From IMG/VR virus record IMGVR_UViG_3300010938_000951, positions 202,900 through 266,899 of that record: 64,000 bases of DNA; one strand, written 5' to 3'. The notes beneath the pieces are model-generated. The model saw nothing but the letters and a program-made list of their open reading frames with translations. It was not told the origin of the DNA and searched no databases. Positions 23,039 to 57,145 of the stretch are shown piece by piece. The first letter of the stretch is position 1; every line of letters begins with the position of its first letter. The translations under genes were made by a program, and so were the position numbers.

Positions 23039-23503
23039 ATGCCAAAATTTAATATAGATTACTCAGGTTTGGCCAATCAGATTACAAAGAGGGCTTATCG
23101 TCTTTCTGATGTAAAAGATCAGTTAGAAACTGTGGCTTTTGATGTGGTTAGATTTAAGGATGGCGACAAGGGTGCTGAACTTTGGCAAGTTCAAAGCGCA
23201 GATGATGGAGATTACATCGTTGCCTTATATGATGAAGAAGAGGTTGAAAAAACTGCTTCTGCTAATCCTTGGGGCGTTTACGTTTCTAAGAATGGACATG
23301 ATTTACAAGTTTCTTACAAGGGAGATCCTCTTGTAAGATTTGCTGCTTCCAAGCTTGGAATTCCAAGTTCAGAGCTACATAAGGCTGAACAGTACCTACC
23401 AGAAAAGCTTGCCACAAATAAGAAGCTCGTCAAAGCACTTTTGAGTGAGCTAAGTGAAACAGCTAGACTAGAGGTATCCAAGAGATACCCGGAACTGGTA
23501 TAA
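23039..23503 (+). CDS. hypothetical protein, first gene of the head module
   Basis: GGGAG RBS; contains VEKTAS motif. Confidence 0.75.
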   Translation: MPKFNIDYSGLANQITKRAYRLSDVKDQLETVAFDVVRFKDGDKGAELWQVQSADDGDYIVALYDEEEVEKTASANPWGVYVSKNGHDLQVSYKGDPLVRFAASKLGIPSSELHKAEQYLPEKLATNKKLVKALLSELSETARLEVSKRYPELV

Positions 23504-23518
23504 TAGAATAGGTGTTCA

Positions 23519-25117
23519 ATGAGCCTTGATAAAATACATCAACTAGTAGGTACCTTAGCTAAAGCAGTAGATGACAATCAGAAGATTGCCACTCCAATTT
23601 TAGCTGCCAAATTAGCAAGATATGTTGAAGCCTATCCTCAAGATAAAACCATCGGCGCAATGTCTCGTGTTATCGACAAGATGGCTAGCAACAATACAAA
23701 CTTTATTCGTAAAGCAGAACTAAAGTCCCTTTACGCAAAACTGTATCAGCATGGCACAAAATTTGCTGAGTTATTTACAGATGAGCTAGGCGAAACAGCC
23801 GAGCCAGAAATTACTACTTATCAACGTGATGAGGCTGTCAAAGCTGTTGATTACCGTGCAGGCGATCAGGTTTTGGCTAATGCATTGGAAAGCGTATTTG
23901 ATAAACATGCTCCGCTTAAGATGTATTCACAGCCGGTAGCTGAAAAAGCTATGAGATCCGTAGGTACTACCTTGGACGCTTGGAACTTGAAACCATCTCA
24001 TTTAACTGTTAGTGATGGTAATGACAAATTTATTGTTATTAAAGCTGATTATGAAACTCCAAAAGGAGTTACATCTTTCTACGTCCCAGTAGAAGTAAAT
24101 AAAAATGATGTGGTTGAACCTCAGGTTTTTATGGGCAATACTGGTCCAGAAGATTTGAATCATACAACTATTAAGGCTTATCTAAGACAACAAGCAGGCA
24201 CCAAAACTAAGATTGGAGCTACTGATATTCTAACTGCATTGACACATGCAACTAGCAGTAAGCGTGAAATTTCTGCGGCTGAATTAGCTGTTACCAGAAT
24301 GAATGCAGAGCGTGCTGGTCAATCAGAATTTTTCCAAGGACAAGTTGTTGGGTTGAAAGTAGAAGCCGCTCCAAAGAGCGATGTTTCTCTTCCTAAGTCT
24401 GATGAATTTGTGTCTTTTGAAGATAAGTTTACTACTCCACAAGGGCTTGCTTCTTGGAGATTTGGTGCTGAAAAAGTAGGTACTGCTAAGGCGCATATCT
24501 CTCGTGAACTACAATCCATGGGATTTGCAAATCACCAAGTAGTTATCACTGGCAATGATGAAAATACCATTTTCTGTGGCGTTTCTCTAGATACTGGTAA
24601 AGTTGCTTTTACTGTTCCAGTAAAAGTTGCTAATAACAAGCTACAAAAACCAACTATTATGTTATGTAATGGTTCTATTGCTACATTTGATAGAAAAGGT
24701 ATTAATAGCTTAGTTTCTGAAAATAAAACAGATGTTAAAGTTGCTGCTGTAGCTTCTAATATGGCATCTCTCAAGCCAAGCGAAGTTGTTAATAATTTAC
24801 GTCAGGCTTTGGCAGAAGAAAATTATGCAAAGGCAGAAGATGCTCTCAATGTATTAGCTAATGCTGGTGATGAGAAGGCATATGCACTTGCGTTCCAGTT
24901 ATATATGACAGGGTTAGCTGGTGTCAAAACTGCTGAAACTAAGTGCTCTAAGATGATTAAGAGCGCTAATAGTGAATATCCGATCTGTTCGCATACGGGG
25001 CTACCTGTCAACAAGGTATACCAAGATAAGAATGGATATTGTCGCCCATTATATCGTAAAGGTATGGACGAGACTTACGAGGGAGCTTCCTTTATTAACG
25101 CCAAGATTTTCGGGTGA
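23519..25117 (+). CDS. hypothetical putative virion protein
   Basis: 532-aa ORF with C-terminal Cys/His cluster and KxA motifs. Confidence 0.75.
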   Translation: MSLDKIHQLVGTLAKAVDDNQKIATPILAAKLARYVEAYPQDKTIGAMSRVIDKMASNNTNFIRKAELKSLYAKLYQHGTKFAELFTDELGETAEPEITTYQRDEAVKAVDYRAGDQVLANALESVFDKHAPLKMYSQPVAEKAMRSVGTTLDAWNLKPSHLTVSDGNDKFIVIKADYETPKGVTSFYVPVEVNKNDVVEPQVFMGNTGPEDLNHTTIKAYLRQQAGTKTKIGATDILTALTHATSSKREISAAELAVTRMNAERAGQSEFFQGQVVGLKVEAAPKSDVSLPKSDEFVSFEDKFTTPQGLASWRFGAEKVGTAKAHISRELQSMGFANHQVVITGNDENTIFCGVSLDTGKVAFTVPVKVANNKLQKPTIMLCNGSIATFDRKGINSLVSENKTDVKVAAVASNMASLKPSEVVNNLRQALAEENYAKAEDALNVLANAGDEKAYALAFQLYMTGLAGVKTAETKCSKMIKSANSEYPICSHTGLPVNKVYQDKNGYCRPLYRKGMDETYEGASFINAKIFG

Positions 25118-25120
25118 CCC

Positions 25121-25948: not shown

Positions 25949-25959
25949 GAGGCTACACT

Positions 25960-27537: not shown

Positions 27538-29375
27538 TGCCAGAAAATAAACCTTCTAAAACTCCAATTATCGATATGCCTTCCAAAAAGCAATTGGCAA
27601 AGGTTATTGGACCTTATTCTGATAAAGAATTAGAGCTTACTCCAGAAATGGAAGAGAAGATGAAGAAGCTTATGGAGTTTTTTGATTTCTATGGAATAGA
27701 TTATAGTAAATTCAAACCAGAGTTTCTGTCATTTATAACAGATAAGAAGGCTTATCCTAATTATGATCAGTATCAATATATTGCCGGCCAACATGATTTA
27801 AAAAAATGGATGTATGCTCTGAAAGATATCCACTACAAACAAAAAGCGGGATTCCCATATCGTGAGGCTATTAAACGAGCAACTCAAGGTTGGGCGAAGA
27901 TGGAAATTTATGATTTCCTAAATTGGCTAAGGTTTTACGAAGAAGGGGCTCACATGAAATATAAGTTTGCACAAGTCTGGTATGAAAATGGTCAGCCAGG
28001 TTACTTCTTACATATAAAGCCAGATGCTCCTAAGGAGCCAGCACCTCATTACGATGCTAATGCTGTCAATGACGCTCGTGAAGAGGCAGAGCGCAGAGAA
28101 GAAAAAAGACAGCTTATTGAAAAACAACGTTCTAAGATTATAGGACGTTTGGATTCTGCGGAAAAACTTTTGCGCTCTCAAGAGGGTCAAGAGTTTGCTG
28201 GTAAAGAGTTAGAAAATTTGATGGAAGCTATTTACACTCTTAAAAAGAAAGTGCAGCTTGTTAATAAACTTAGCGTCTCTACTCGTTTGTATGAAGACAT
28301 GATCGTTCGTGAAGGAAATGTTCTTAAGCGTAATGGTTTTACCAAAGCTGCTGAAGTTTTATATTCTTTGGCTCAAACTCCTGGTGCGTCTGGAGAATCT
28401 GCTCAAGGCACACCAGAGGCTGGTGCTGTTCCACCACCATCCCCACCAGCAGATCCATCAGGAGCAGGTAATCCTGGTGCTCCCGGAGGATTACCAATGC
28501 CACCTCCGCCAGGCGCCCCAAATATACAGACCCCTGTGGGTGGTGACCAAAATGATCCCCCTCAACCAAAAGGCATTAAAGAATTCATTGATAATATGAA
28601 TGAGGGCAATAAGACAGATGCTTCAGAATCTGATGATGAATTAGAAGTAGAAGATTCTGAAGATACATTAATGGTAACAGAAGCTCAAGCTGTTGCGCCT
28701 GTAACTCCACCGCCTCCCCCGGCCGCATTGGAAGATGTTCCAATGACAGACGCCCCTCCACCAGATAGAAATCCTCCCGCATTCGTCCCAGAGGCTACCC
28801 CTAAAGAACCAACCAAAACAGAAGAAGAGCCATTAGAAGTAACTGAAGAAGATTTGCCACCACCAGGCGGAGATACTCCTTCTGGCGGCGCTGGTGCCAG
28901 CATAGATAGTAAAATCGATAGTGCATTTCAAAATGTAACAATGGAAGAAATTGTATCTGAATTGGAAGATATCTCTACATATTTTAAAGTGCGTGAGATA
29001 CCAAGACGTTTAGCACGTTTAGATATGATGTTTGATGCTAAGGGAATTTCAGCTTATTTCCCAAGTTTAGCTGAAGCTCAAAACAGAGCTTTGGATGCTA
29101 ACAACTATATTGCTACTCGTATTGATGATATTCTAGCCAAAGTACGTGGAGCTATGGCTACATCTGATATCGCCACCAAATTAAAAACAGATCAAGAAAA
29201 AGAAAAACAGCGCAAACAGATGAGAAAAGAGCAAGAAAATGCTGAACTTGAGGGAGCAACTCCAACAGAAAAAGAAACGCCAACAGTAGAATTAGGTGAG
29301 CTAGGAACTCCTCCGGCTCCTCCAGCAGCCCCAGCAGCTCCTCCAGCGGCCCCACCAAGACCACCAGCAGTCTAA
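27537..29375 (+). CDS. Pro-rich putative head protein
   Basis: 612 aa; Pro/acidic linkers, KxA motifs and shared helix motif. Confidence 0.72.
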   Translation: MPENKPSKTPIIDMPSKKQLAKVIGPYSDKELELTPEMEEKMKKLMEFFDFYGIDYSKFKPEFLSFITDKKAYPNYDQYQYIAGQHDLKKWMYALKDIHYKQKAGFPYREAIKRATQGWAKMEIYDFLNWLRFYEEGAHMKYKFAQVWYENGQPGYFLHIKPDAPKEPAPHYDANAVNDAREEAERREEKRQLIEKQRSKIIGRLDSAEKLLRSQEGQEFAGKELENLMEAIYTLKKKVQLVNKLSVSTRLYEDMIVREGNVLKRNGFTKAAEVLYSLAQTPGASGESAQGTPEAGAVPPPSPPADPSGAGNPGAPGGLPMPPPPGAPNIQTPVGGDQNDPPQPKGIKEFIDNMNEGNKTDASESDDELEVEDSEDTLMVTEAQAVAPVTPPPPPAALEDVPMTDAPPPDRNPPAFVPEATPKEPTKTEEEPLEVTEEDLPPPGGDTPSGGAGASIDSKIDSAFQNVTMEEIVSELEDISTYFKVREIPRRLARLDMMFDAKGISAYFPSLAEAQNRALDANNYIATRIDDILAKVRGAMATSDIATKLKTDQEKEKQRKQMRKEQENAELEGATPTEKETPTVELGELGTPPAPPAAPAAPPAAPPRPPAV

Positions 29376-29383
29376 GGAGATAA

Positions 29384-30154
29384 ATGAAACTCCGTGAACT
29401 GCTTCAAGAAATGAAGAGAGTCCAGGTAAATATAGGCGCATCTACGCCGTATATTTGCGGAGGTACGCCCAGAGATAAATACATGGGCAAATTAGAAAAT
29501 ATTGCAGACATAGATATGACTACTGGAGATAAAACTGTAGACTATCTATCTCAAGAATTTTATTTAACATTACGTAAAAGGTATAACGTTACTAGAAAAA
29601 CTATGGATGATGGACATAGTACGATTTTCATTGGCAGTTTGAAAATTGATTTCTCTTCAAATTTTATTGTACCAAATATTGATCAAGAGCTGGCAAAATT
29701 AGGAATTACTAAACCAACAGATATGCAACGCGAAATGTTTAGTCGTGATTTTACTTGCAACTCATTATTGCTTACTACAGATTTAAAACAAGTTTTAGAC
29801 CCAACCAAAAGAGGATTCAAAGATATTAAAGATAAGAAAATACGTACTTGTTTATCACCAGAAATTACATTAACATCTAATAGAAATAGGGTGGTAAGGG
29901 CTATTTATTTAGCTTGTAAATTGGATTTCGATATAGACGATTCAATTATAGATTTTGTGCGCCAACATCCAGATTCTGTAAAAATCTCAACTGAGAAATC
30001 TATGAATGATAAGTTGAATGAAGCGTTCTCTAGAAATCCAGAGAAGGCTGCAGCACTTATTACACAAATGAATCTCTGGAGCTATATTCCAATTACAGAA
30101 AAAGTTTATCCATATTATATAAAACAAATTAAAGGTAAAACTAATGTCGGTTAA
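29384..30154 (+). CDS. class II (CCA/poly(A) polymerase family) nucleotidyltransferase, head/neck only, atypical templating motif
   Basis: GGTPRD, DIDMTT, SRDFTCNSL, DPTKRGFKDI, SNRNRVVRAIYL; AAGGAG RBS. Confidence 0.85.
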   Translation: MKLRELLQEMKRVQVNIGASTPYICGGTPRDKYMGKLENIADIDMTTGDKTVDYLSQEFYLTLRKRYNVTRKTMDDGHSTIFIGSLKIDFSSNFIVPNIDQELAKLGITKPTDMQREMFSRDFTCNSLLLTTDLKQVLDPTKRGFKDIKDKKIRTCLSPEITLTSNRNRVVRAIYLACKLDFDIDDSIIDFVRQHPDSVKISTEKSMNDKLNEAFSRNPEKAAALITQMNLWSYIPITEKVYPYYIKQIKGKTNVG

Positions 30155-30896
30155 TAAGCAAGCCTATTTTCAGGGTGGTGGCGGTGTAAATGAGCCAAAA
30201 CCAAAGAAGAAGAAATATAAATCTGATCCTGCTATTGTAGTTCAGCCAAGGTTCAAAGAGCCGTTTTATCGCAATTACGATTTATACAATGTTCCGGGCG
30301 AGCACGGCCCAGGCGCCGGTTGGCACGACATGAAAAAGTATAAATCGGTTTCAGAATTTCTAAAAGCCAAAAGAAAGAAGCTGAAGGACAAGTACAAAGC
30401 CGACGACTCTTGGATTTTGGATGATAATTCAAAAACGAAGAAAAATCCAAATATTGAAGCTCGTGCCGCCGTTTTTGAGGAAATTATTAAAAACGCTATC
30501 GATTTTCCAATTGATGATCAGATTGATGAGGGGTTGGGCGGACCATTTGAGACAGATACTGTTAATGATAATCCAGTAGGATATGCTAATTTAACAGGCG
30601 GAAAATTAGATGAATATTTGCCAAAAAATGATTTTGAAGGTAAATTACCAACTAATTTAGATTTTGGTAGGGACTATGTTGAGAGGCAAGAGCCTGGTCG
30701 TGGGCTATTAGATGATATTATTGAAAAACTTTTCAATAAGTATTTACCAGCATCGGAAACAGATTTATTTGGATTACCAGATGGTATTGAACCAAATTCT
30801 GATTTAGATGCAGAACAGACAATGGATGTAGAAGAGCCATTTACTGGAACATCCGATATTGGCACTGATATGTATAAGGATAATTGGATCGTCTAA
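30144..30896 (+). CDS. acidic hypothetical head-module protein
   Basis: N-terminal NKQAYFQGGGGVNEP motif shared with the scaffold. Confidence 0.75.
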   Translation: MSVNKQAYFQGGGGVNEPKPKKKKYKSDPAIVVQPRFKEPFYRNYDLYNVPGEHGPGAGWHDMKKYKSVSEFLKAKRKKLKDKYKADDSWILDDNSKTKKNPNIEARAAVFEEIIKNAIDFPIDDQIDEGLGGPFETDTVNDNPVGYANLTGGKLDEYLPKNDFEGKLPTNLDFGRDYVERQEPGRGLLDDIIEKLFNKYLPASETDLFGLPDGIEPNSDLDAEQTMDVEEPFTGTSDIGTDMYKDNWIV

Positions 30897-30963: not shown

Positions 30964-32040
30964 ATGACTTTACAATCGACAGCACAACAGCTATACGTCA
31001 TAGACCCGGTTTCCCCAGCGTCACAACTACCAGCTCATGACGAACATTCAGTTATAGCTATACCTCCACACCTACACCATGGTGGCGAGGAAGAGCTTAT
31101 GAGTGGGCCTATTGAAGTGTCCGAGCCGGGGGAAATTGAAATTCTTATAGAAGACATTCCAGGCGCTCCTCCAGGAACTAAGGATCCAGAAATTGAAGTT
31201 GTTGATGAATCATTGCAAGTTGAAGATAACAATGAAGCAAAAAAGGAAACCGAAAAAGACGAAAAGGGTAGTAAATGGAATTGGTCAAAGCACGGTCCAC
31301 ATGGCTTTGTAGCTTGGGTCAAGGAAAGACTTGATTCTGTTCCAAAACACTCAGGATACGATTCTGCCGGACTAGAGCGCGCCATGGCTTACATGGAAAA
31401 ATTAGACAATGAAATTTCTAAGGCCATGAGAATGGATCTTGATTCTGAATTAGACGCCAATCAGGTCGAGAAGATTCGCTCTCAATTAGATGAAGGTTTA
31501 GCTCGTTTGCGTGATCGTCTTGATAAGGTTAAAGAATCCAAAAAGTCTTCTCGTAAAAAGAAGAAGACCGCTGCCGATTTGAAGTCTCAAATTGACAAAG
31601 TGCTTGAAAAATATGCAGATGAAGATTTACAAGCATGGGTAGAGGATACTGGTGTTCCAGGCGAAGAATGGAGCGCAGAAAAAGTAATTGTACAACTCGC
31701 TAATGAAGGCTTTGAACCTGGTTTTGAAGGCACTAACATCGTTAAAGAGGCTCAAAAAATTACTGGTGTGCAAGGTGTTTATGTAACCGTTCCTCTTTTA
31801 ATCTCTAGGGTGGCTCGTGTTTGCATTAATGGTACTGTATCTGCGGGACATGATATTGAAGATTTATACAGACGCCAAGTAGCTAAGTATAAATTAGATG
31901 ATCGTGAGCAGGCTGAAGTAAGACAATTACTATGGGATATGGGCTATCCACTTCGTGAAGACCGTGGATTCTTCCCAGAAGATGACCTAGAAGTATACGA
32001 TACTGATAACATGGATTGGGCAGCTAACTACAGGGCATAA
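30964..32040 (+). CDS. hypothetical head-module protein
   Basis: GAGG RBS; IVKEAQ and KKTAA motifs. Confidence 0.75.
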   Translation: MTLQSTAQQLYVIDPVSPASQLPAHDEHSVIAIPPHLHHGGEEELMSGPIEVSEPGEIEILIEDIPGAPPGTKDPEIEVVDESLQVEDNNEAKKETEKDEKGSKWNWSKHGPHGFVAWVKERLDSVPKHSGYDSAGLERAMAYMEKLDNEISKAMRMDLDSELDANQVEKIRSQLDEGLARLRDRLDKVKESKKSSRKKKKTAADLKSQIDKVLEKYADEDLQAWVEDTGVPGEEWSAEKVIVQLANEGFEPGFEGTNIVKEAQKITGVQGVYVTVPLLISRVARVCINGTVSAGHDIEDLYRRQVAKYKLDDREQAEVRQLLWDMGYPLREDRGFFPEDDLEVYDTDNMDWAANYRA

Positions 32041-33192: not shown

Positions 33193-33214
33193 GGGTATAT
33201 TTCAGAATATATCC

Positions 33215-38382: not shown

Positions 38383-38386
38383 AAAT

Positions 38387-39406: not shown

Positions 39407-39415
39407 GGAAACACA

Positions 39416-39811: not shown

Positions 39812-39814
39812 GCA

Positions 39815-46660: not shown

Positions 46661-46674
46661 TTATCAGAGGAATA

Positions 46675-47160: not shown

Positions 47161-47167
47161 GGACACA

Positions 47168-48004: not shown

Positions 48005-48054
48005 TCCGAGGGTTATATAGGTACTAGAGCGGTATAGGTGATAGAAGGACACTC

Positions 48055-48744: not shown

Positions 48745-48839
48745 GCTAAAGCCTCTGAAATAGCTGCATATTCTTTTATTTAGTATGAGCTTTCTATATT
48801 ACAGCATAATATAGACAATCTATTCATTTGAGGCCACCA

Positions 48840-49982
48840 ATGACTTTTAAACACACGAAATTTGAGGATTCTCCAACTATGCGAGCCTTAGAAAAAGTTG
48901 CCAAGGACAAGGGTTTAGTTAAACCGGAAACTCTTCAAAAGAAGGCTTCTGTTGCTAAAAAGGCTAATTATGCTCCTACTGATAATCTCATGGAGAATAT
49001 TCTTAAGCTTTGTGCTGGTTTGAGAGACGCTGGTCTTGTAAAAGAAGCTGCTGAAATTGAAACTAACTATCTTAATTATAAGCGCGCCCAAACTCTATAT
49101 GAAACTTCTAAAGAGAAGGGTGAAGATTTAGTACAATCCGCTCATCCAAAAGGAAGCCATAAATTGGAAGGCGTTGATGGTGAAGAGGCAACATTTGAAG
49201 ATATTATTGATCAACATCTTAAAATAATGAAGGCCATAGAAAAGAAGCCAACTGGAAAATTATCAGAAGCTAAAGCTAAAGACATTATTAAAGCAGTCAA
49301 AATGGCCTTGGCACAAGCTGCCACTATTGATGACGTTAAAAATATTACACGCCAAATCAAAGAAAAAGTTAATCAGATTAATGAACTAGCAAGCCCAGAA
49401 CTTACAATTGGTATGGGAATGTTTGTTAACAGCATAAATTCCAAAATGGATAATCCAACCGTTTACAATCTAACCGAGGCAAAGGGTGTATTGGCTCGTT
49501 TGTATAAGAGATTGGATCCAAGTTTTATTAGTGGCGCTACTTGGGGAGCTGGTGGCTTATCCGATTATACTTGGGGTAGAGTTAAGCCATTATTTTCTCT
49601 AATCAACAATTTACTATCTCAAGCCATAGATAAGCGTAGAAGCTTTGATGAATCTGAGCAAAGTAAATTAGAAGGTAGACCAGATCCAAATGCCCCTCCT
49701 CCACCACCAAAAGCAGATCCGGCCGCAGATATGGTAAGAAAAATTAATGGCCTTGCAGCGCAATTTGATGCTGTAGCAAATCAGATTGCATCGGATGATC
49801 CAAAAGATACAGAAGCTCTTGAAGGCACAAAGAAGTGGCTAAGAGACAAAGCCGGTGCTCTCAGAGGGCTCGCTAGTCAATTCCAAAACGAAACTGATAA
49901 GGAAGCAGTTACGAACGTATATCAAGCCACATTAAATAAGTATCAAGCTGCTCTTGCAAAAACTCAACAGGATTGGGCATAA
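48840..49982 (+). CDS. putative internal head/ejection protein
   Basis: Helical; multiple KxA motifs; LYET...AHP segment shared with 53852..55099. Confidence 0.6.
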   Translation: MTFKHTKFEDSPTMRALEKVAKDKGLVKPETLQKKASVAKKANYAPTDNLMENILKLCAGLRDAGLVKEAAEIETNYLNYKRAQTLYETSKEKGEDLVQSAHPKGSHKLEGVDGEEATFEDIIDQHLKIMKAIEKKPTGKLSEAKAKDIIKAVKMALAQAATIDDVKNITRQIKEKVNQINELASPELTIGMGMFVNSINSKMDNPTVYNLTEAKGVLARLYKRLDPSFISGATWGAGGLSDYTWGRVKPLFSLINNLLSQAIDKRRSFDESEQSKLEGRPDPNAPPPPPKADPAADMVRKINGLAAQFDAVANQIASDDPKDTEALEGTKKWLRDKAGALRGLASQFQNETDKEAVTNVYQATLNKYQAALAKTQQDWA

Positions 49983-51208: not shown

Positions 51209-51209
51209 T

Positions 51210-52703
51210 ATGAGTTTCATTTATGATAAAAACTTACTGGCTGAGCTAATTAAAAGCGCTATAGATCATGAAGTAAAATTTAACAAACATGGTCAACTAG
51301 CAGCCGATCCAAATGTAAATTTAGAGTTTCGTAATTATCTAACTTTAACAAAAAAGTTGGCAGATCAGTTAGAGCAAAAATATTTTCCTTCTGGCCCAGG
51401 TGAAACTGTTGTAACTACTGGAACTGGTAAAGAAGCGCAATTAGGAGTTCCTGATTTATCCAGTTTGGGTAATTTTTTTGACTTTATGGTAAATAATCAA
51501 ATCATGGTTGACAATAAAAGAATTGTCTACAGTGCCAATGAGCAGCCACCAGATCCAAGATTATGGAAGCCAGTCACAGCTCAACAAATTAAGTTCATGA
51601 TGGAAACGCAAAATGAACAAAATGAGCGTACACAGTTTCAAGCTGACTATTATGTCAATCGTGATTTATTAGTTAAGTACGTAAATTCTATTTTACGAGA
51701 CTCCTCTAAAGAAGATGATGAAACTCAAAAATTTATAAAGACAATGCTTGGCGCTCGTCTTCAGGATATTAATCGTATCTTTAGAACCAAATTAACTACC
51801 GAATATAAAGAGCCAGAAAAAGTTCTACCAGATAATACAGTACTTGATAACACGCCAAAAGATATGGACCCACAAACATGGTTTAATCGTGGTAATATTC
51901 CATTAACCATTGGCGATCTTAAAGGCGGAACTGCATTTAATGCTTGGTTAAGCGGTAATAGTATTTCTATTAAGGTTGATAATCGTCAAATGATGATTAA
52001 TCATCCAGAATTTGATCGTTGTGCAATAATGAGAATTCTAAATTCTAGAGCAAAATACAATCTAGATAGAGCTACATCTGCACAAGCTCAACAAGTTGCT
52101 ACTATTTATGCGCAGAGAATACAAGCTCTTGCTGGTGAACTAAAGTGTGATTTGAGTGATAAATCAAGTCAACAGCAGCAACAACAGCAACAGGGTCAAG
52201 GACAAGGTTTGTCTGGTGCTTCTCCACAAATCTTGCAACAACTTTCCAGCTTGCGTCCATTTAATGCTCAATATATTAGCTTTCCAGAAATCAAGAAGTT
52301 TATTGAATTATATACTAAATATGCAAATGACGCAGATGTTACCAAGACCGCTGCAGATTTAAATGGATATATGGAAGCTTTCAAATCATATCTTGGAATG
52401 CGTGGAGACACTTTCCAGCTTACCAATATAGATAATAATAGATTTAAGAGTATGCTTAAGAATCCATCTGCTGCTCGCCAAGCTGCTGATCTTTTGTATG
52501 ATATCGTTGTATATGCTGGCCAGTTATATCAACGTCTAGTTGTTTCATTACAAACTGTTGCACAAGACGCCGAAAGAGCAAAGTATATTGATTATCGTGG
52601 TATGCAGCAACAGGTAACTCCTGGCGGCCCACAACAAACCAATGTTACTGATTTAAATGATTTGAGACAAAGTTTATCTAGAGAATGGATGGCTAGAAGA
52701 TGA
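51210..52703 (+). CDS. putative internal head/ejection protein
   Basis: 497-aa helical ORF with poly-Q tract; FNKHGQ motif variant. Confidence 0.6.
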   Translation: MSFIYDKNLLAELIKSAIDHEVKFNKHGQLAADPNVNLEFRNYLTLTKKLADQLEQKYFPSGPGETVVTTGTGKEAQLGVPDLSSLGNFFDFMVNNQIMVDNKRIVYSANEQPPDPRLWKPVTAQQIKFMMETQNEQNERTQFQADYYVNRDLLVKYVNSILRDSSKEDDETQKFIKTMLGARLQDINRIFRTKLTTEYKEPEKVLPDNTVLDNTPKDMDPQTWFNRGNIPLTIGDLKGGTAFNAWLSGNSISIKVDNRQMMINHPEFDRCAIMRILNSRAKYNLDRATSAQAQQVATIYAQRIQALAGELKCDLSDKSSQQQQQQQQGQGQGLSGASPQILQQLSSLRPFNAQYISFPEIKKFIELYTKYANDADVTKTAADLNGYMEAFKSYLGMRGDTFQLTNIDNNRFKSMLKNPSAARQAADLLYDIVVYAGQLYQRLVVSLQTVAQDAERAKYIDYRGMQQQVTPGGPQQTNVTDLNDLRQSLSREWMARR

Positions 52704-53800
52704 TATCTAATAGTGAAGTCAGTTTTTGTGTAGATACACTGCTTGTAGAGACAATTTTGGGAGATCCAAAACTTTACAAGAAGGCTGGCTTCGTCCAAGA
52801 TTTGCTTGGTAAAGTTAAAGAGTATTTTAGTCACCAAATTGATCCACAAAATCCAGTTAAAAGCGTAATAGATATTTTAGCCCCAGGTGCTTTGTGGTTA
52901 TTATTTCAATCTATTGGTATTGGTAAATGGGGTTTTCTATTAGGTTTATTAATGGATGTATTCCACGTTGATGTGAGTGGTATGCTTACTTCTCTATGGA
53001 ATAAAGTTAAAGAGATGGTAGGTAGTGGTAAAAAAACTTCTTCATCTGAGATTGATGCCGCAACACAATCTACTGTTCAAGAGTTTAATAAGCCGCCAAC
53101 ACCCGAAGAGGAACAAAGAGGGCTTGAAGCTCTTAAACAAAAACAGCAAGAGCAACAAACACAAAAGGCTGATGATCAAAAAGTTTATAGTTCACTTGAA
53201 CTATTAGAAGATGCCAGATTGTTTAGATTGGCTCTTATTGATTATGAAACTCAGGCACTTAGACTTACTAAAGAAGGGTTTAATAAAACGGCTGGATTTT
53301 TTGGCGATACTAAAGCTAAAGGCACCAGTTTATTAGGCAAAATTTTTGGTTGGATTATTAAGCTAGCATTAGCTTCTGCTGGTTTGATGGTTGCAGGCGA
53401 TGTTGCTAATGAAATGTTAGGTAGACCAAGTGCTTTGAGTGGAACTTATCAACGTGGCCAAGAGTCCTCTGAATCACAAGCTCCTGCTCCACCACAAGCC
53501 AAACAAACCAAGTTCCCACCAAAGGGAGATGGCCCATTACCAGCATCTATACCAATAGTTAATAATCCTCAGAATATTGAAAACTTCTTAGTTCAAATTA
53601 CTAAAGATGTATATTCTGGATTAGATAATAAAGAAAATCTTATCAGAAACTCACCAGCTTTTCAGGCTGTTAAAGATAATATTGTTTGGTACAATACTCA
53701 TAATGAGGGCTCGTCTGTTACATTTATTCCGGGCTTATTTAAAACGAAAAAGCAACTGGTAGACTACTATATTGATGATGTAGCTAAAAGTGCTCCATAA
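52700..53800 (+). CDS. putative membrane-inserting ejection protein
   Basis: Hydrophobic segments (ALWLLFQSIGIGKWGFLLGLLM; IFGWIIKLALASAGLMVAG) after LYKKAG and FNKTAG motifs. Confidence 0.6.
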   Translation: MISNSEVSFCVDTLLVETILGDPKLYKKAGFVQDLLGKVKEYFSHQIDPQNPVKSVIDILAPGALWLLFQSIGIGKWGFLLGLLMDVFHVDVSGMLTSLWNKVKEMVGSGKKTSSSEIDAATQSTVQEFNKPPTPEEEQRGLEALKQKQQEQQTQKADDQKVYSSLELLEDARLFRLALIDYETQALRLTKEGFNKTAGFFGDTKAKGTSLLGKIFGWIIKLALASAGLMVAGDVANEMLGRPSALSGTYQRGQESSESQAPAPPQAKQTKFPPKGDGPLPASIPIVNNPQNIENFLVQITKDVYSGLDNKENLIRNSPAFQAVKDNIVWYNTHNEGSSVTFIPGLFKTKKQLVDYYIDDVAKSAP

Positions 53801-53851
53801 AATCGGGCATAACAGAACATATCATTATAATTTCTTTTTAGGTGAAACCAC

Positions 53852-55099
53852 ATGAGAAAAAGCGAGATATTTGAAAGTTTTGTCAAGATTGCCCAAGAGA
53901 GGGGACTTGTGTCTCAAGCCGATCATGCTGAGCACACTGAGACATCTTTCTCTGAGACTAATCCAAGATTTGATTCGTTAACTATTGAGCAAATCAGCAA
54001 ACTTTACAATACCAAACCACAGCAACCAAAAGATATGGAATACAAGCGCAATATTATCGAAGATGCGCATCCAGAGTCGGTTGTTGTTTCACCTTCTTAT
54101 GATAAATTAAATGGTCTCGTTGAAAACGAAAATGAAGGCCAAGCTATTCGCGCCCGCATTGTTATGAAGGATCCGGATGGCCATTTGATCAATCGTAAAT
54201 ATGCCAAGAAGAACTTATTGCTTTCTTTGGTGCGCGTTGCTAATGAGCTAGACGCTCGCAACAACGATGAACTTCGTAAATTGGCTGATGTTTGTTTAGC
54301 GCAATCCAGCGGTCAAATGGAAAAGAAAGCTTATGCTATTGCTATTGTGGCAGCCGTTGCTGTAGTATTAGGTGCCATTTATGCAAAACAACATTTACGT
54401 TTTCATAGCGATGGTTGGGCAAGAGATTATGAAAAGACTATGTCTGAAATTGATGATTTGTTAAATTCTAACACAAATTGGGGTGTTGGTTATGCGTACA
54501 CCCCACAATTCATTCAAATTGTGAATAATCTTAAAGCAGAATTAGGAAAACTAAACGCTGTAGTTATGAAGGCAATTCCAATCTTAGAAAAGATGGAAAC
54601 ACCCCGCAATGCTGAAGAATTAAAGGCAATGATTGATAAGCCAGAAACTCAAGAAGCCGCTAAGGTATTACAAGAATTCCAAGATCAAATGAAGAGTTCT
54701 TATCCATTCATTAATACTGTTATTACTAATTTTGGCAATGAAGGATTTAAACAGCGCGCAATTGCTCAAAAAGGTTTTCTATCATCTCTTGTTGACTCCT
54801 CCGAAATTTTGCATGGCGGCAAGGGATTAGTAGCTGATGATTTTGATGATGTTAAACATGCTCTTCAGACTTTAAAAGTAGATTTGACTAATTTAGCCAA
54901 GACTTTGCAAGGCGCTGAAAGTGTTAAACAAAAAGCTCAACAGGATTTGTCTTCTGGCCAGGCAGAGGTTGCTTCTACATTTACGCAACCTGCGCAACAA
55001 TCTGGTGGTACACAAGCCCCAGGTGGAAAACCAAGTGAGCCAGGCAAAGATATCGAAGAAGAAGCAAAAGGCATATTAGGAGGTCTTTTCGGAGGATAA
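53852..55099 (+). CDS. putative membrane-inserting ejection protein
   Basis: MEKKA directly followed by hydrophobic YAIAIVAAVAVVLGAIYA. Confidence 0.6.
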   Translation: MRKSEIFESFVKIAQERGLVSQADHAEHTETSFSETNPRFDSLTIEQISKLYNTKPQQPKDMEYKRNIIEDAHPESVVVSPSYDKLNGLVENENEGQAIRARIVMKDPDGHLINRKYAKKNLLLSLVRVANELDARNNDELRKLADVCLAQSSGQMEKKAYAIAIVAAVAVVLGAIYAKQHLRFHSDGWARDYEKTMSEIDDLLNSNTNWGVGYAYTPQFIQIVNNLKAELGKLNAVVMKAIPILEKMETPRNAEELKAMIDKPETQEAAKVLQEFQDQMKSSYPFINTVITNFGNEGFKQRAIAQKGFLSSLVDSSEILHGGKGLVADDFDDVKHALQTLKVDLTNLAKTLQGAESVKQKAQQDLSSGQAEVASTFTQPAQQSGGTQAPGGKPSEPGKDIEEEAKGILGGLFGG

Positions 55100-55247
55100 T
55101 ATGGGCATAGCCCAATATCTTTTGTGACTCTTAAATATTTTTTTATTGAAAACATATCAATAAAGAAGTATCTTCGTAGATTTTGTAAGTAATAGGTGTA
55201 AGTAACCATGCCCCTTGAGGCATTTGAAGATTAAATAGGAAAATACA

Positions 55248-56000
55248 ATGGCTCTAAAACTTTTACAACCAGGCATTCAGCCACTAGGTCAGTTTGATGG
55301 TCTTGATGCAGATGTTCTACAAACCAAGGGTGGCGAAGTTGTTACTTTCACATACGTAACCACTTCTGGTCAACCAGGTGTTTTCACCGCAGGTCAAGAC
55401 CAAGCCGCTTATGACCAGTTTGACGGTTATGTCAACGCATCTGGTACTTTTAAGCGCCCAGCAGTAACCAAGACCCATGCCGGTCTTAACTTTGCCGCTC
55501 GTCCATTGATGCTATCTGACGATGGTATTCAGGGATACGGAACTCTCTTCGGAGCAGTTGTTGGTGGCGCTGTTGGTCAACAAGTAAACGGTCCAAACAG
55601 CTACACTGGTGCTGTACTTGGCCCTCACACTGCAACCGGCTCTGGTAAGACCACTTGCTGGGATAAGCCAGGTCTCTATGCAGTATCCTTGGACGCAACT
55701 CACTCCAGCTTGCAGCCAACCAACACCACCCTAACTGGCGGTGATGCTCTAGGCTTTACAACTGGCGGTCTTTTGACTCAGGCAACTAACGCTGCTTCTG
55801 TATCCTCCAACGGTTCTGCCGTAGGCTCTGGTGGTGTCGCTGTTGTTGTTGGTCGTCTAGTAGAGTTCAACACCAACCAGTCTTTGGTAACCACTCCAAA
55901 CTACTTGGTTGCTGCTTTGAACAGCCCATCTGGTAACGTCTCTTCTGTACAACCACGTGCATTTACATTCGCTACCATCTACTTTGCTCCACCAGCATAA
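55248..56000 (+). CDS. probable capsid decoration/minor capsid protein
   Basis: Directly upstream of MCP; G/T-rich beta protein; TATGSGKTTCW motif paralogous to 48055..48744. Confidence 0.6.
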   Translation: MALKLLQPGIQPLGQFDGLDADVLQTKGGEVVTFTYVTTSGQPGVFTAGQDQAAYDQFDGYVNASGTFKRPAVTKTHAGLNFAARPLMLSDDGIQGYGTLFGAVVGGAVGQQVNGPNSYTGAVLGPHTATGSGKTTCWDKPGLYAVSLDATHSSLQPTNTTLTGGDALGFTTGGLLTQATNAASVSSNGSAVGSGGVAVVVGRLVEFNTNQSLVTTPNYLVAALNSPSGNVSSVQPRAFTFATIYFAPPA

Positions 56001-56131
56001 GTAACTGAATAAACTTCTCTAGCCGAGAGGCTGGGGGAGACGTAAGTCTCAAAGTCCTTAACTGGGCACCTCTCACCCTTTTAACTGTAAGATAAAGCTG
56101 GTAAGACTGGCAAATTTTTCTAGGAGAACCT
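56001..56131 (+). other. structured intergenic leader upstream of major capsid gene
   Basis: Hairpins closed by GAGA (56025-56028) and GTAA (56042-56045) GNRA loops, plus a third GCTGGT/ACTGGC wobble stem. Confidence 0.5.
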
Positions 56132-57145
56132 ATGAATATGTTTAGTGGTAAAGGCGAAATTAACGCCTCATCTTTCAAAGATGCATTGCAGGCATTGGTA
56201 AAGTATGCAGCCATTCTCGAAGAGAATGTTCCTGCCAACCAAGGTCTCGCCGGCCAACCAGCATTGAGCGATGAGAAGCGCGATGAGTTGATCACTCGTG
56301 CTATCATGACTCAGGACGGAAAGATTGCTCTTGCTCAGGCAATGGCAAACCCAATCCGTAGAAACTTAGATTACCACGGCATTGCCCGTCGTGCTCTAGT
56401 AGTTGATCCACTACCACAGGGAGCAATCCCAACCTACGACCGTGATATTGACGTAGCTGCTGTTGTTATTTCTAGCAACGGTACTGGTCCAGAATCCCGT
56501 GTCTTCGGTGACCGTGTAGTAGTTCCTGAGTTTGAAATCTACGCCAACCCAACGGTTCGTATCGCTGAGGTAAAGCGTCGTAGATTCAACGTCATTGACA
56601 GAGCAGTTCAGAAGGCTCGCCAAGAAATCATGGCCCAGGAAGATGCAAACATCTTCGCAGCTCTTGATGCGGCAGCCTCCGTTGAGAACACTCTCACTGA
56701 CATCGCCGATGCAGGTTTGCTAAAGCGTGACTTAGTTGAAATTAAGCAACAGATTGACCGTTGGGACTTGGTAACCACCAAGTACTTTATGAACATCAAC
56801 GAGTTCACTGACATCCTCAAGTGGGGATCTGGTGGTGGACAAGGTGTTGGCGGAGGAGACTTCGATCCAGTAACCATGCGTGAAGTTCTACAAACTGGTC
56901 TATACGCCCACATCTGGGGCACTGACATTATGGTCAGCAAGATTGTTCCACCTGGAACCATCTACGGTGTAGCCGATCCTGAGTTCGTTGGTGTAATGCC
57001 AATCCGTCAGGACATCGAAGTTCTACCAGCAGACGAGCCAAAGCAATTGAAGCTCGGATGGGTAGTCTCTGAGATTATCGGTATCGCCATTGTAAATCCT
57101 CGCGGATGCGCAGCAGGCAGAAAGAGCGTTGTTATCGGAGCCTAA
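56132..57145 (+). CDS. major capsid protein (HK97 fold)
   Basis: 337 aa; position after protease/scaffold and decoration genes; biased codon usage; strong terminator follows; ARRALVVDPLPQGAIPTYDRD, PEFEIYANP, RQEIMAQEDANIF pattern. Confidence 0.82.
   Translation: MNMFSGKGEINASSFKDALQALVKYAAILEENVPANQGLAGQPALSDEKRDELITRAIMTQDGKIALAQAMANPIRRNLDYHGIARRALVVDPLPQGAIPTYDRDIDVAAVVISSNGTGPESRVFGDRVVVPEFEIYANPTVRIAEVKRRRFNVIDRAVQKARQEIMAQEDANIFAALDAAASVENTLTDIADAGLLKRDLVEIKQQIDRWDLVTTKYFMNINEFTDILKWGSGGGQGVGGGDFDPVTMREVLQTGLYAHIWGTDIMVSKIVPPGTIYGVADPEFVGVMPIRQDIEVLPADEPKQLKLGWVVSEIIGIAIVNPRGCAAGRKSVVIGA

What the first reader, a model, noticed from the sequence alone, without database searches (positions are those of the whole stretch)
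23039..57145. Shared hydrophobic-x-K-x-A motif across about 20 head-module proteins: a candidate maturation-protease code
Seen in translations: VEKTAS (23039), MIKSAN (23519), YKFAQ and DKKAY (27537), VNKQAY and IIKNAI (30144), IVKEAQ (30964), KKTAQ (32042), FKKNAQ (portal), MDKLAQ and LLKEAG (37126), LVKVAK and MVKCAA (39815), INKQAY, NKEAY, LIKKAQ and LRKAAG (scaffold), YKYAQ (45974), LRKQAS (47168), LQKKAS and YKRAQ (48840), FEKYAQ (49982), LYKKAG and FNKTAG (52700), FVKIAQ and MEKKAY (53852), LRKVAL (58539), and LVKYAA at residues 22-27 of the major capsid protein. The motifs often sit at the border between a short N-terminal leader or helical block and a linker or new domain. Established: T4 gp21 and phiKZ/SPN3US proteases cleave many head proteins at short consensus sites ending in Glu. 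Inference: the protease at 42252 cleaves after Ala in a Lys-x-Ala consensus, a specificity I do not know to be described. If so, this motif predicts a large packaged proteome and its mature N-termini from sequence alone.
Basis: partly seen in the sequence, partly recalled or inferred. Interest (0 to 1): 0.85.

Follow-up and report, generated by a model that had tools for sequence, protein, structure and literature searches.

The report
Shared Lys-x-Ala tag on head proteins
About twenty otherwise unrelated head proteins of this giant phage share a short tag (hydrophobic-x-Lys-x-Ala), far beyond chance and conserved in hundreds of related phages. It most likely marks where the phage's own head-maturation protease recognises and trims them, but no experiment has yet shown the cut.

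Summary
All 28 strings exist. [LIVMFYW]-x-K-x-A occurs 58 times in the 30 proteins of 23039-57145, against 22.8 expected (z 7.5). The 27 upstream proteins have 15 against 15.8. Seventeen of the 30 carry it in their first 50 residues (2.9 expected). The excess survives local shuffles and is specific to this order and spacing. It is not explained by paralogy or by a DNA-level signal.

In orthologues of 24-60% identity, the hydrophobic residue, Lys and Ala (or Gly/Ser) are kept while both x positions drift. This holds for 20 sites in head-module families and none in upstream families. Conserved copies flank the protease domain of the 1231-aa protease-scaffold protein (42252-45947), punctuate its scaffold part, and sit in the major capsid protein (MCP) and portal leaders. 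Bacillus phage G, the closest cultured relative, has the same tag at the N-termini of its protease, portal and several small proteins.

Best reading (about 0.6): this is the recognition and cleavage code of the prohead protease, probably doubling as a capsid-targeting leader. It would be a Lys/Ala analogue of T4 L/I-x-E and phiKZ S/A-x-E. Cleavage itself and the exact bond cut (after Ala, or after Lys) are inferred. A helical docking tag that is not cut remains a live rival.

The parts
42252..45947 (+). Protease-scaffold polyprotein, 1231 aa. It carries 12 h-x-K-x-A copies against 3.0 expected, most of them conserved.
42381..42971 (+). Prohead-protease domain, about residues 44-240. His132 (42645-42647) and Ser183 (42798-42800) are invariant. 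A CxxC...CxH insert is present.
   Evidence: phrog_18299 'head maturation protease', E 1e-11. Alignments with phage G gp19, Lu11 gp072 and 25 metagenomic homologues. AF2 core pLDDT mostly above 85. Foldseek top hit is T4 gp21, but at E 0.09.
42345..42359 (+). FRKFA (res 32-36): candidate N-terminal self-processing site, just upstream of the conserved protease core that begins around ..IAPK.EDFLY.
   Evidence: F-x-K-x-A is kept in most of 26 homologues, and phage G gp19 has LVKTAA at the aligned place.
43035..43049 (+). LEKLA (res 262-266): candidate C-terminal self-processing site, just after the protease domain and followed by a variable linker.
   Evidence: Kept in 0.86 of orthologues with x1 at 0.24. 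Conservation drops from 0.73 upstream to 0.29 downstream.
43416..43496 (+). LDKLA (389-393) and INKQA (411-415). The second immediately precedes repeat module 1 (YFQGGGGVNEP...).
43773..43787 (+). KNKEA (508-512), immediately before repeat module 2 (YWQGGGGVNEP...).
   Evidence: K kept 0.90, A kept 1.00
44229..44243 (+). LIKKA (660-664), followed by a variable Pro-rich linker.
   Evidence: Kept 1.00, x positions 0.38 and 0.38
44811..44855 (+). FVKYA (854-858) and IVKRA (864-868), at the end of a conserved helical block and before an acidic variable region.
45432..45446 (+). VRKEA (1061-1065).
45813..45827 (+). LRKAA (1188-1192).
   Evidence: Kept 0.81, x2 at 0.10
56195..56209 (+). LVKYA (res 22-26) in the N-terminal extension of the major capsid protein (ORF 56132-57145). 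Phage G MCP starts at about residue 42 of this protein.
   Evidence: L in 115 of 121, K in 116 of 121, A in 121 of 121, while residue 23 varies. The first 45 residues are the most variable part of the MCP. The motif is kept in MCPs of 35-71% identity. Phage G comparison.
35413..35427 (+). FKKNA (res 82-86) in the variable N-terminal 100 residues of the portal (ORF 35170-37044).
   Evidence: Kept 0.94, x positions 0.32 and 0.04. Phage G portal has MAKQA at residues 16-20, and homology of the portal bodies starts after both motifs.
37126..37140 (+). MDKLA, residues 1-5 of ORF 37126-38382.
   Evidence: Kept in 0.98 of 58 orthologues of 45% mean identity, x positions 0.36 and 0.12. Flexible in the AF2 model.
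37579..37599 (+). LLKEA (res 153-157 of ORF 37126), in a disordered linker between two helical domains.
   Evidence: Kept 0.95. The AF2 linker 144-167 has pLDDT below 50.
23081..23095 (+). ITKRA (res 15-19 of ORF 23039).
   Evidence: Kept 1.00, x positions 0.33 and 0.10
27960..27974 (+). YKFAQ (res 142-146 of ORF 27537), the Y-K-x-A-Q variant. FTKAA at 28338-28352 is also conserved.
30150..30164 (+). VNKQA (res 3-7 of ORF 30144), a 7-aa leader before the YFQGGGGVNEP module. IIKNA at 30483-30497 is also conserved.
31738..31752 (+). IVKEA (res 259-263 of ORF 30964), between a hypervariable stretch and a conserved C-terminal domain.
   Evidence: Kept 1.00. Upstream conservation 0.07 with indel score 0.86; downstream conservation 0.79.
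39878..39892 (+). LVKVA (res 22-26 of ORF 39815). MVKCA at 40277-40291 is also conserved.
46064..46078 (+). YKYAQ (res 31-35 of ORF 45974).
   Evidence: K kept 0.94, A kept 0.94, x at 0.19
46762..46776 (+). FNKLA (res 30-34 of ORF 46675, a paralogue of 47153).
   Evidence: Too few orthologues to test conservation.
47219..47266 (+). LRKQA (23-27) and LVKAA (34-38) of ORF 47153.
   Evidence: Each kept 0.80
48888..49091 (+). Four copies in the first 90 residues of ORF 48828: LEKVA (21), LQKKA (36), LVKEA (70), YKRAQ (84).
   Evidence: Kept 0.73-0.93 in a family of 39% mean identity
50015..50029 (+). FEKYA (res 15-19 of ORF 49973), followed by a Pro-rich linker.
   Evidence: Kept 0.95 in a family of 30% mean identity, x positions 0.19 and 0.24
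51279..51293 (+). FNKHG (res 24-28 of ORF 51210), a Gly variant. Orthologues have h-x-K-x-[G/A]-Q.
52772..52786 (+). LYKKA (res 25-29 of ORF 52700).
   Evidence: Kept 0.90, x positions 0.38 and 0.26
53879..53893 (+). FVKIA (res 10-14 of ORF 53852). MEKKA (156-160, nt 54317-54331) is also conserved.
   Evidence: Kept 0.94 and 0.96 in 51 orthologues
58623..58679 (+).
   Evidence: Kept 0.87 and 1.00

Best explanation
[L/F/I/M/V]-x-K-x-[A, less often G or S] is the recognition motif of the phage's own prohead (head-maturation) serine protease. That protease is the N-terminal domain of the 1231-aa protease-scaffold polyprotein (ORF 42252-45947).

The motif marks three kinds of place:
1. Short N-terminal leaders of 5 to about 90 residues on at least 15 otherwise unrelated head-module proteins, including the MCP (residues 22-26) and the portal (82-86).
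2. Both flanks of the protease domain.
3. Module borders inside the scaffold part of the polyprotein.

Proposed mechanism: the tagged proteins co-assemble with the protease-scaffold core inside the prohead. The protease then cuts at the motif, most likely just after the small residue (P5 hydrophobic, P3 Lys, P1 Ala). This removes the leaders, frees the protease, and chops the scaffold so it can leave before DNA enters. The leaders probably also act as capsid-targeting sequences, as in T4.

Shown: the motif's excess, its position bias, its conservation and protein-level selection, its presence around a prohead-protease homologue, and its recurrence in phage G and in a distant relative.

Inferred: that cleavage occurs at all, which bond is cut, and that the tagged proteins are packaged.
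For: Statistics: 58 copies against 22.8 expected in the head module and 15 against 15.8 upstream. 17 of 30 proteins against 2.9 expected have a copy in the first 50 residues. The excess is robust to local shuffles and specific to order and spacing. It is present in each sub-block: 37126-41997, 42252, and 45974-55099.

Conservation with drifting x positions: 20 such sites in 29 head-module families, none in 10 upstream families. Synonymous codons vary freely at the conserved Lys and Ala. There are only two paralogous pairs within the head module.

Protease identity: phrog_18299 at E 1e-11. His132 and Ser183 are invariant across homologues, including phage G gp19 and Lu11's annotated head maturation protease.

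Sites flank the protease domain, and the N-terminal one is shared with phage G gp19. The scaffold part carries many copies, as does the putative scaffold of a distant relative, L234.

The module YFQGGGGVNEP starts exactly at +1 after K-x-A, twice inside 42252 and after a 7-aa leader in ORF 30144. Phage G gp10 starts ...LKKVS then FDGGGG.

In ORF 37126 the conserved copy at 153-157 lies in a disordered inter-domain linker.

Precedent: T4 L/I-X-E with a 10-aa capsid-targeting sequence, phiKZ S/A-X-E, SPN3US A-X-E, with multiple redundant sites in propeptides (PMC9026906; PMC10052503).
Against: - There is no direct evidence of cleavage for any protein.
- The conserved positions (h0, x2/A, +3 hydrophobic; a small or polar residue at -1 that could cap a helix) also fit one face of an amphipathic helix. 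AF2 draws the copies flanking the protease domain (res 32-36, 262-266) as helices.
- Some conserved copies lie inside confidently folded helices and are probably structural (37126:76 and 37126:391). Conserved copies also occur inside the TerL and portal bodies.
- A test of whether sites sit at borders between conserved and variable sequence gave no uniform trend.
- The Foldseek match to the T4 and herpesvirus proteases is not significant (best E 0.09), and Pfam finds no protease domain.
- The phage G MCP has no leader at all.
- The second copy before the protease core, LKKIAP, has Pro at +1, and its Lys is not conserved.
Confidence: 0.6

Rival explanations
1. Docking or capsid-targeting helix that is not cut. 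The motif would be the conserved face of a short amphipathic helix. It would bind a common partner in the prohead (scaffold core, protease or inner shell surface), load the tagged proteins, and stay attached. This works like an encapsulin cargo-loading peptide, or like the targeting half of the T4 capsid-targeting sequence.
For: The logo has hydrophobic residues at h0, x2 and +3, a small residue at the Ala position, a small or polar residue at -1 that could cap a helix, and no Pro inside. AF2 predicts helices at the copies flanking the protease domain. The strong N-terminal bias suits a loading tag. In T4, targeting and processing reside in different residues of the same 10-aa leader (PMC9026906).
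Against: - Copies flank the protease domain and sit between scaffold modules, where a loading tag has no obvious use.
- Leaders such as MDKLA or MSVNKQA followed by a Gly run are too short and too close to flexible sequence to form a stable helix.
- A conserved copy lies in a disordered linker.
- The MCP, which builds the shell, carries one too.
Confidence: 0.2
2. Same protease code, but the bond cut is after Lys (h-x-K | x-A). This is a charge-reversed copy of the T4 register (L/I-x-E |), with the small residue at P2'.
For: P3 hydrophobic with P1 charged is exactly the T4 and phiKZ layout (PMC9026906). Lys is almost never replaced by Arg, which suits a P1 pocket. LKKIAP before the protease core has Pro at +1, which would block a cut after Ala.
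Against: - The repeated module and its free-standing copy start at +1 after Ala, not after Lys.
- The Ala position accepts only A, G or S (0.77, 0.19, 0.04), which is typical of a small S1 pocket.
- The Lys of LKKIAP is not conserved, so that copy is probably not a site.
Confidence: 0.12
3. No function. The pattern would be a by-product of composition (Lys- and Ala-rich helical proteins), of paralogy, of the reader's selective eye, or of a nucleotide-level signal near the starts of late genes.
For: Head-module proteins are somewhat richer in Ala (0.088 against 0.070). A few listed copies are not conserved.
Against: - Within-protein and 10-25 aa block shuffles keep z at 6.6-7.5.
- Permuted orders and other spacings are not enriched.
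- An unbiased triple scan recovers L-x-K-x-A.
- Only two paralogous pairs exist within the head module.
- Lys and Ala are conserved with variable x positions in families of 30-47% identity.
- Synonymous codons vary at the conserved positions.
Confidence: 0.02
4. Lys-centred modification or cross-link motif. The invariant Lys would be the substrate of an acyl-transfer, isopeptide or similar reaction that fixes internal proteins in the head.
For: Lys is strictly preferred over Arg. HK97-type capsids are known to use Lys isopeptide chemistry (my own knowledge).
Against: No candidate modifying enzyme was found in the module. The location in variable leaders, in linkers and around the protease domain fits removal better than fixation.
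Confidence: 0.04

Closest known systems
T4 prohead protease gp21 with its L/I-X-E sites and the 10-residue capsid targeting sequence of the internal proteins
   Same: A three-position consensus shared by many head proteins. It occurs in short N-terminal leaders, at many places in the scaffold core, on both ends of the protease itself, and in the major capsid protein. The leader probably doubles as a loading tag.
   Different: The residues differ: Lys and a small residue instead of Glu. The motif spans five positions rather than three. The protease is fused to a roughly 1000-aa scaffold. No sequence similarity to gp21 was detectable, and the fold match is only suggestive (E 0.09).
phiKZ gp175 and SPN3US gp245 prohead proteases (S/A/G-X-E, A-X-E) of giant myoviruses
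   Same: A giant phage with many internal head proteins. The portal and MCP are among the likely substrates. Several redundant motif copies occur within one propeptide (compare ORF 48828, with four copies in 90 residues).
   Different: P1 is Glu there. Here h-x-E-x-A is not enriched (23 against 19). The substrates were shown by mass spectrometry there and are only predicted here.
Bacillus phage G gp19 (protease homologue) and the N-terminal leaders of phage G head-module proteins
   Same: It is the closest cultured relative: MCP 54% and protease domain 32% identical. gp19 has LVKTAA at the place aligned with FRKFAA. The portal has MAKQAAS at residues 16-22. gp13, gp20, gp38, gp56, gp9 and gp10 begin with ..L-x-K-x-[A/S].
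   Different: The phage G protease is a separate 300-aa protein. Its MCP has no leader. Its leaders are more uniform and more basic, of the type M-K-(K/R)-L-x-K-x-A, at the very N-terminus. I found no paper describing the motif or any cleavage sites for phage G. The 2020 structure and proteome paper is not in the library.
Herpesvirus assemblin, consensus (V/L/I)-x-A | S
   Same: It belongs to the protease fold group that phage prohead proteases belong to (PMC9026906). It cuts after Ala and releases itself from a protease-scaffold fusion. So P1 Ala has a precedent (my own knowledge).
   Different: The register differs: there P3 and P4 are hydrophobic and P1' is Ser. Here P3 would be Lys, P5 hydrophobic, and +1 is Q, E, S, A or G with Ser at only 0.12.
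Encapsulin cargo-loading peptides
   Same: A short conserved terminal peptide that brings unrelated proteins into an HK97-fold shell.
   Different: Those peptides are usually C-terminal, are not cut, and have a different sequence (my own knowledge). Here copies also lie inside the scaffold and around a protease.

Membership tests
Prohead (head-maturation) serine protease of the HK97 gp4 / T4 gp21 / herpesvirus assemblin kind (for ORF 42252, residues about 44-240) | Profile or sequence similarity to known prohead proteases | tested here: met
   phrog_18299 'head maturation protease' at E 1e-11 over residues 105-213. 27% identity to Lu11 gp072, annotated as head maturation protease, and 32% to phage G gp19. 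Pfam-A gave no hit.
Prohead (head-maturation) serine protease of the HK97 gp4 / T4 gp21 / herpesvirus assemblin kind (for ORF 42252, residues about 44-240) | Conserved His and Ser about 50 residues apart (the catalytic pair) | tested here: met
   His132 and Ser183 (in S-M-G) are invariant in 26 homologues, in phage G gp19 and in Lu11 gp072. Calling them catalytic is by analogy.
Prohead (head-maturation) serine protease of the HK97 gp4 / T4 gp21 / herpesvirus assemblin kind (for ORF 42252, residues about 44-240) | Assemblin-like fold | tested here: inconclusive
   The AF2 core has pLDDT mostly above 85. The Foldseek top hit is T4 gp21 (5jbl, E 0.09, probability 0.51), followed by many herpesvirus proteases (probabilities mostly 0.1-0.5). 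No hit has E below 0.001.
Prohead (head-maturation) serine protease of the HK97 gp4 / T4 gp21 / herpesvirus assemblin kind (for ORF 42252, residues about 44-240) | Gene lies between portal and major capsid protein, next to or fused with the scaffold | tested here: met
   Portal at 35170, protease-scaffold at 42252, MCP at 56132.
Prohead (head-maturation) serine protease of the HK97 gp4 / T4 gp21 / herpesvirus assemblin kind (for ORF 42252, residues about 44-240) | Proteolytic activity on head proteins | not testable with these tools
   Needs expression or virion proteomics.
Consensus-site propeptide processing of large myovirus heads (T4 L/I-X-E; phiKZ and SPN3US S/A/G-X-E) | One short consensus shared by many otherwise unrelated head proteins and absent as an excess elsewhere in the genome | tested here: met
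Consensus-site propeptide processing of large myovirus heads (T4 L/I-X-E; phiKZ and SPN3US S/A/G-X-E) | Sites lie in N-terminal propeptides, in the scaffold or core proteins, and on the protease itself, often in several copies | tested here: met
   17 of 30 proteins have a copy in the first 50 residues. 12 copies occur in 42252, including both flanks of the protease domain. Four copies occur in the first 90 residues of ORF 48828.
Consensus-site propeptide processing of large myovirus heads (T4 L/I-X-E; phiKZ and SPN3US S/A/G-X-E) | Glu at P1 | tested here: not met
   The conserved residues are Lys and Ala/Gly/Ser. h-x-E-x-A is 23 against 19 expected. This would be a different specificity, so it works like these systems but is not a member of the Glu-specific group.
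Consensus-site propeptide processing of large myovirus heads (T4 L/I-X-E; phiKZ and SPN3US S/A/G-X-E) | Mature virion proteins start right after the consensus | not testable with these tools
   No virion data exist for this uncultured phage. The phage G proteome paper and its supplements are not held.
T4-type capsid targeting sequence | An N-terminal leader of about 10 residues that ends in the protease site | tested here: inconclusive
   Leaders of 5-40 residues ending in the motif are present: MDKLA, MSVNKQA, and the copies at 49973:15-19 and 53852:10-14. Phage G leaders are 8-12 residues. That the site is cut has not been shown.
T4-type capsid targeting sequence | The leader is necessary and sufficient for packaging into the head | not testable with these tools
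   Needs reporter fusions in a cultured relative.
Herpesvirus assemblin substrate consensus (V/L/I)-x-A | S | P1 Ala, P1' Ser, P3 hydrophobic | tested here: not met
   If the cut is after Ala, P3 is Lys and +1 is Q 0.16, E 0.12, S 0.12. Only the small P1 residue would be shared.

The most novel reading that the evidence does not exclude
A prohead-protease specificity not described before: hydrophobic-x-Lys-x-(Ala/Gly/Ser), cut after the small residue. It would be used across the phage G-like clade of huge phages, with over 300 contigs in IMG/VR alone, many of them from genomes of 200-480 kb. One five-residue code would then define the processed and packaged head proteome (at least 15-20 proteins per genome, including MCP, portal, protease and scaffold) and also serve as the capsid-targeting signal.
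Probability: 0.45. Interest if true: 0.72.

Novelty: new variant of a known kind. Interest (0 to 1): 0.62.

Why it matters
Head maturation by a protease that reads one short code is known in detail only for T4 and the phiKZ/SPN3US group, and both codes end in Glu. A Lys/Ala code in the phage G lineage would show that the same assembly logic evolved a different chemistry.

It would allow the internal or ejected head proteins of hundreds of uncultured huge phages to be listed from sequence. All of them here have unknown function.

It is directly testable, because phage G is cultured and its virions have already been analysed by mass spectrometry.

If the leaders also load proteins into the head, they would be a ready-made packaging tag for this clade.

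Tried and rejected
1. Chance, composition or paralogy. Rejected by whole-protein and block shuffles, order and spacing controls, an unbiased triple scan and self-BLAST.

2. A DNA or RNA signal near gene starts. Rejected because synonymous codons vary at the conserved Lys and Ala.

3. Looking for published cleavage data.
- The phage G structure and proteome paper is not held.
- The 2025 phage G genome paper has no cleavage data, and no supplements are held.
- The phage G tail paper has none either.
- Four literature searches found no description of a K-x-A motif.

4. Sequence search of the protease region against PDB chains found nothing. Pfam on the protease-scaffold, the MCP and the tagged proteins gave no informative domain. 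PHROGs on ten more proteins found nothing.

5. The idea that every site sits at a border between conserved and variable sequence was tested. Only some do, and in both directions.

6. The second copy before the protease core (LKKIAP) was dropped as a site, because its Lys is not conserved in homologues.

7. LIKSA at 51210:13 was dropped in favour of FNKHGQ at residue 24, which is the conserved one.

8. PaBG and Lu11, more distant relatives of the MCP and protease, lack the motif in the MCP N-terminus, and Lu11 also lacks it in its protease N-terminus. They cannot serve as test cases.

9. ORF 55248 has no detectable similarity to the phage G decoration protein gp26.

10. A genome-wide survey of phage G leaders was not run. 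Only 40 kb around its head genes was examined.

Full report
**What the window is.** The window is the last 64 kb of IMG/VR contig IMGVR_UViG_3300010938_000951 (266,899 bp). Nearly all genes are on the + strand.
- The major capsid protein (MCP, 56132-57145) matches phrog_2522 and is 54% identical to the phage G MCP gp27.
- The portal is 35170-37044.
- The large terminase (TerL) is 33047-35092. By orthologues its true start is Met58 of that ORF.
- ORF 42252-45947 (1231 aa) starts with a prohead-protease homologue.
- More than 300 IMG/VR contigs carry this MCP, and the 80 retrieved are at least 90% identical; several exceed 200 kb and the largest is 480 kb.
- Their neighbouring head genes are only 24-60% identical. 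That made a conservation test possible.

**Check of the observation.**
- With residues shuffled within each protein, [LIVMFYW]-x-K-x-A occurs 58 times against 22.8 +/- 4.7 in the 30 proteins of 23039-57145.
- It occurs 15 times against 15.8 in the 27 proteins upstream.
Nothing comparable appears upstream.
- The three positions are jointly required, and Arg does not replace Lys.
- Seventeen of the 30 proteins have a copy in their first 50 residues, against 2.9 expected. The upstream set has 1 of 27. Beyond residue 50 there is still an excess of 36 against 19.4.
- Shuffling within blocks of 10-25 residues leaves z at 6.6-7.4.
- The five other orders of the three residues give 23-42 copies, and other spacings give 13-39.
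- The excess holds without ORF 42252 (46 against 19.7) and in each sub-block of the module.
- Self-BLAST finds only two paralogous pairs among these proteins: 30144 with part of 42252, and 46675 with 47153.

**Conservation.** I aligned each window protein with its orthologues from 230 related loci. I then asked, at every copy, how often each position is kept among sequences below 85% identity.
- The N-terminal copies show a characteristic pattern. In ORF 49973 (family mean identity 30%, average Lys conservation 0.26), the copy at residue 15 keeps h 1.00, x 0.19, K 0.95, x 0.24, A/G 1.00.
- The same pattern holds for 53852:10 and 53852:156, 52700:25, 48828:36 and 48828:70, 47153:23, 37126:1 and 37126:153, portal:82, 23039:15, 39815:22 and 58485:61.
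- Using a fixed rule (h, K and A each at least 0.8, mean of the x positions at most 0.55), 20 of 75 copies in 29 head-module families qualify. None of 11 copies in 10 upstream families do.
- Copies deep inside proteins are mostly lost in orthologues and are chance: 49973:226, 51210:368 and 51210:377, 60504:249.
- The small position accepts Gly and rarely Ser. Family-weighted shares are A 0.77, G 0.19, S 0.04.
- Two variants are also conserved: Y-K-x-A-Q (27537:142, 45974:31, 48828:84) and N-K-x-A-Y-[F/W]-Q-G (42252:411 and 42252:509, 30144:3).
- At the conserved Lys and Ala, AAA/AAG and all four GCN codons are used freely. Selection therefore acts on the protein.

**The MCP.** Among 120 homologues of 87-99% identity, the first 45 residues are the least conserved part (0.68-0.72, against about 0.9 or more, mostly at least 0.95, elsewhere). 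Yet L22, K24 and A26 are kept in 115, 116 and 121 of 121 sequences, while residue 23 varies.
- In cluster representatives of 35-71% identity, the aligned place reads IVKYAS, MAKFAS, LIKYAH, LTKYAA and MDKFAS.
- It is absent from PaBG- and Lu11-like MCPs.
- The phage G MCP begins at about residue 42 of the window protein. The tagged extension is therefore outside the conserved fold.

**The protease-scaffold protein.**
- Residues 105-213 match phrog_18299, 'head maturation protease', at E 1e-11.
- The first 260 residues align with phage G gp19 (32% identity) and Lu11's annotated head maturation protease (27%).
- N-x-N-G-D, His132, S183-M-G and a Cys/His cluster are conserved. His132 and Ser183 also stay invariant in 25 metagenomic homologues.
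- An AF2 model has a confident core.
- The best Foldseek hit in the PDB is T4 gp21, followed by many herpesvirus proteases, but none is significant (best E 0.09). I count the fold as consistent, not shown.
- F-x-K-x-A lies just upstream of the conserved core in most homologues, and as LVKTAA in phage G gp19.
- [L/I/F]-x-K-[L/I]-[A/S/T] follows the domain at 262-266 and leads into a variable linker.
- Further conserved copies lie at 389, 411, 508, 660, 854, 864, 1061 and 1188.
- Residues about 408-500 and 505-595 are a tandem duplication. Each copy begins right after K-x-A with Y-[F/W]-Q-G-G-G-G-V-N-E-P.
- The same module opens ORF 30144 after the 7-residue leader MSVNKQA.
- Phage G gp10 reads ...LKKVS followed by FDGGGG. 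This is the best available hint that the functional boundary is just after the small residue.

**Relatives.**
- In the 40 kb around the phage G head genes, 4 of 18 proteins (gp4-gp21) have the motif in the first 30 residues, against 0.7 expected (p 0.004).
- gp13, gp20, gp38 and gp56 begin with M-K-(K/R)-..-L-x-K-x-A. The portal has MAKQAAS at residue 16.
- A contig whose MCP is only 35% identical (L234) has about ten h-x-K-x-[A/S] copies in the 608-aa protein upstream of its MCP.

**Structure of one substrate.** For ORF 37126, AF2 used 48 sequences and gave pLDDT 76.5.
- The conserved copy at 153-157 lies in a disordered linker (residues 144-167) between two helical domains.
- The copy at residues 1-5 lies in a flexible N-terminus.
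- The copies at 76 and 391 lie inside confident helices.
- So conserved copies are not all alike. Some are probably structural.

**Interpretation.** The layout is that of the T4 and phiKZ/SPN3US systems: one short consensus in N-terminal leaders, in the scaffold and on the protease itself, often in several copies (PMC9026906; PMC10052503). The residues differ, so this is not a member of the Glu-specific group.

I take it as the recognition and cleavage motif of the protease at 42252, with a probable second role in loading proteins into the prohead (confidence about 0.6).
- The bond cut is not determined. After the small residue is favoured by the module boundary and by the A/G/S tolerance. After Lys would mirror the T4 register.
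- The main rival is a helical docking tag that is not cut. The logo fits one face of an amphipathic helix, and AF2 draws the copies flanking the protease domain as helices.
- The two readings are not exclusive.

No accessible paper describes this motif, but the key phage G proteome paper could not be read.

**Verdict.** The finding is genuine, statistically strong and conserved. Its most likely meaning is a new variant of a known kind of system. It can be tested in cultured phage G.

Noticed in passing
window 43470-44040 (ORF 42252 residues about 408-595) and 30144-30330: There is a tandem duplication of a roughly 90-residue module (Y-F/W-Q-G-G-G-G-V-N-E-P-T-P-G..K-Y-P-K-D..) inside the scaffold. 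The same module opens ORF 30144 (44% identity over 63 aa). Phage G gp10 has a related start. Its function is unknown.
   Followed up: partly
window 14568-14765 (ORF 13806 residues 255-320) and 45609-45806 (ORF 42252 residues 1120-1185): A protein of the upstream (replication-side) region shares a 66-residue stretch (35% identity, E 1e-10) with the C-terminal domain of the protease-scaffold protein.
   Followed up: no
homologues of ORF 42252 (P0042, P0054-P0057): Several metagenomic homologues of the protease domain carry intein or homing-endonuclease domains (PF05203, PF14890, PF14528). The window copy has none.
   Followed up: no
window 56132-57145 and loci L002-L081: The MCP is unusually conserved (87-100% identity in more than 100 clusters), while adjacent head genes are only 24-60% identical.
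   Followed up: partly
window 56141-56194 (MCP residues 4-21); P0181-P0314; L082, L083: A second, older N-terminal element, F-[N/D]-x-x-G-[E/Q]-[L/I]-N-A-[S/Y]-[S/D]-[K/R]-x-[D/E]-A, precedes the Lys-x-Ala copy. It is kept even in MCPs of 30-37% identity, including PaBG and Lu11, which lack the Lys-x-Ala copy. It may be a scaffold-binding or propeptide element.
   Followed up: partly
window 33047-33217 and 32686-33192 (- strand): The first 57 codons of the TerL ORF are absent from most orthologues, so the true start is probably at 33218. A 168-aa ORF on the opposite strand ends just before that point.
   Followed up: partly
window 29384-30154 (+), 57208-58452 (-), 40564-41334 (+), 38387-39406 (+): Several enzymes lie inside the head module: two PolyA_pol/CCA-adding-type nucleotidyltransferases (one on the opposite strand next to the MCP), a dual-specificity/tyrosine phosphatase homologue, and a glucosaminidase homologue. 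None has a conserved N-terminal Lys-x-Ala copy.
   Followed up: partly
L001 (phage G 3298-44119): gp38, gp53, gp56, gp57, gp17, gp5: Many small phage G proteins, including some well downstream of the MCP, start with a basic leader of the type M-K-(K/R)-L-x-K-K. The family looks larger than the head gene block. A genome-wide count was not made.
   Followed up: partly
P0017, P0024 (homologues of ORF 42252): Source names of two close homologues are metagenome-assembled genome (MAG) labels from Cytophagaceae and Flammeovirgaceae. This hints at Bacteroidota hosts for this clade, whereas phage G infects a Bacillus/Lysinibacillus host.
   Followed up: no
window 48055-48744 and 55248-56000: Two well-conserved proteins of the head block (75-87% and 47-61% identity) have no conserved N-terminal copy of the motif. 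That would fit proteins added to the outside of the shell. ORF 55248 shows no similarity to the phage G decoration protein gp26.
   Followed up: partly
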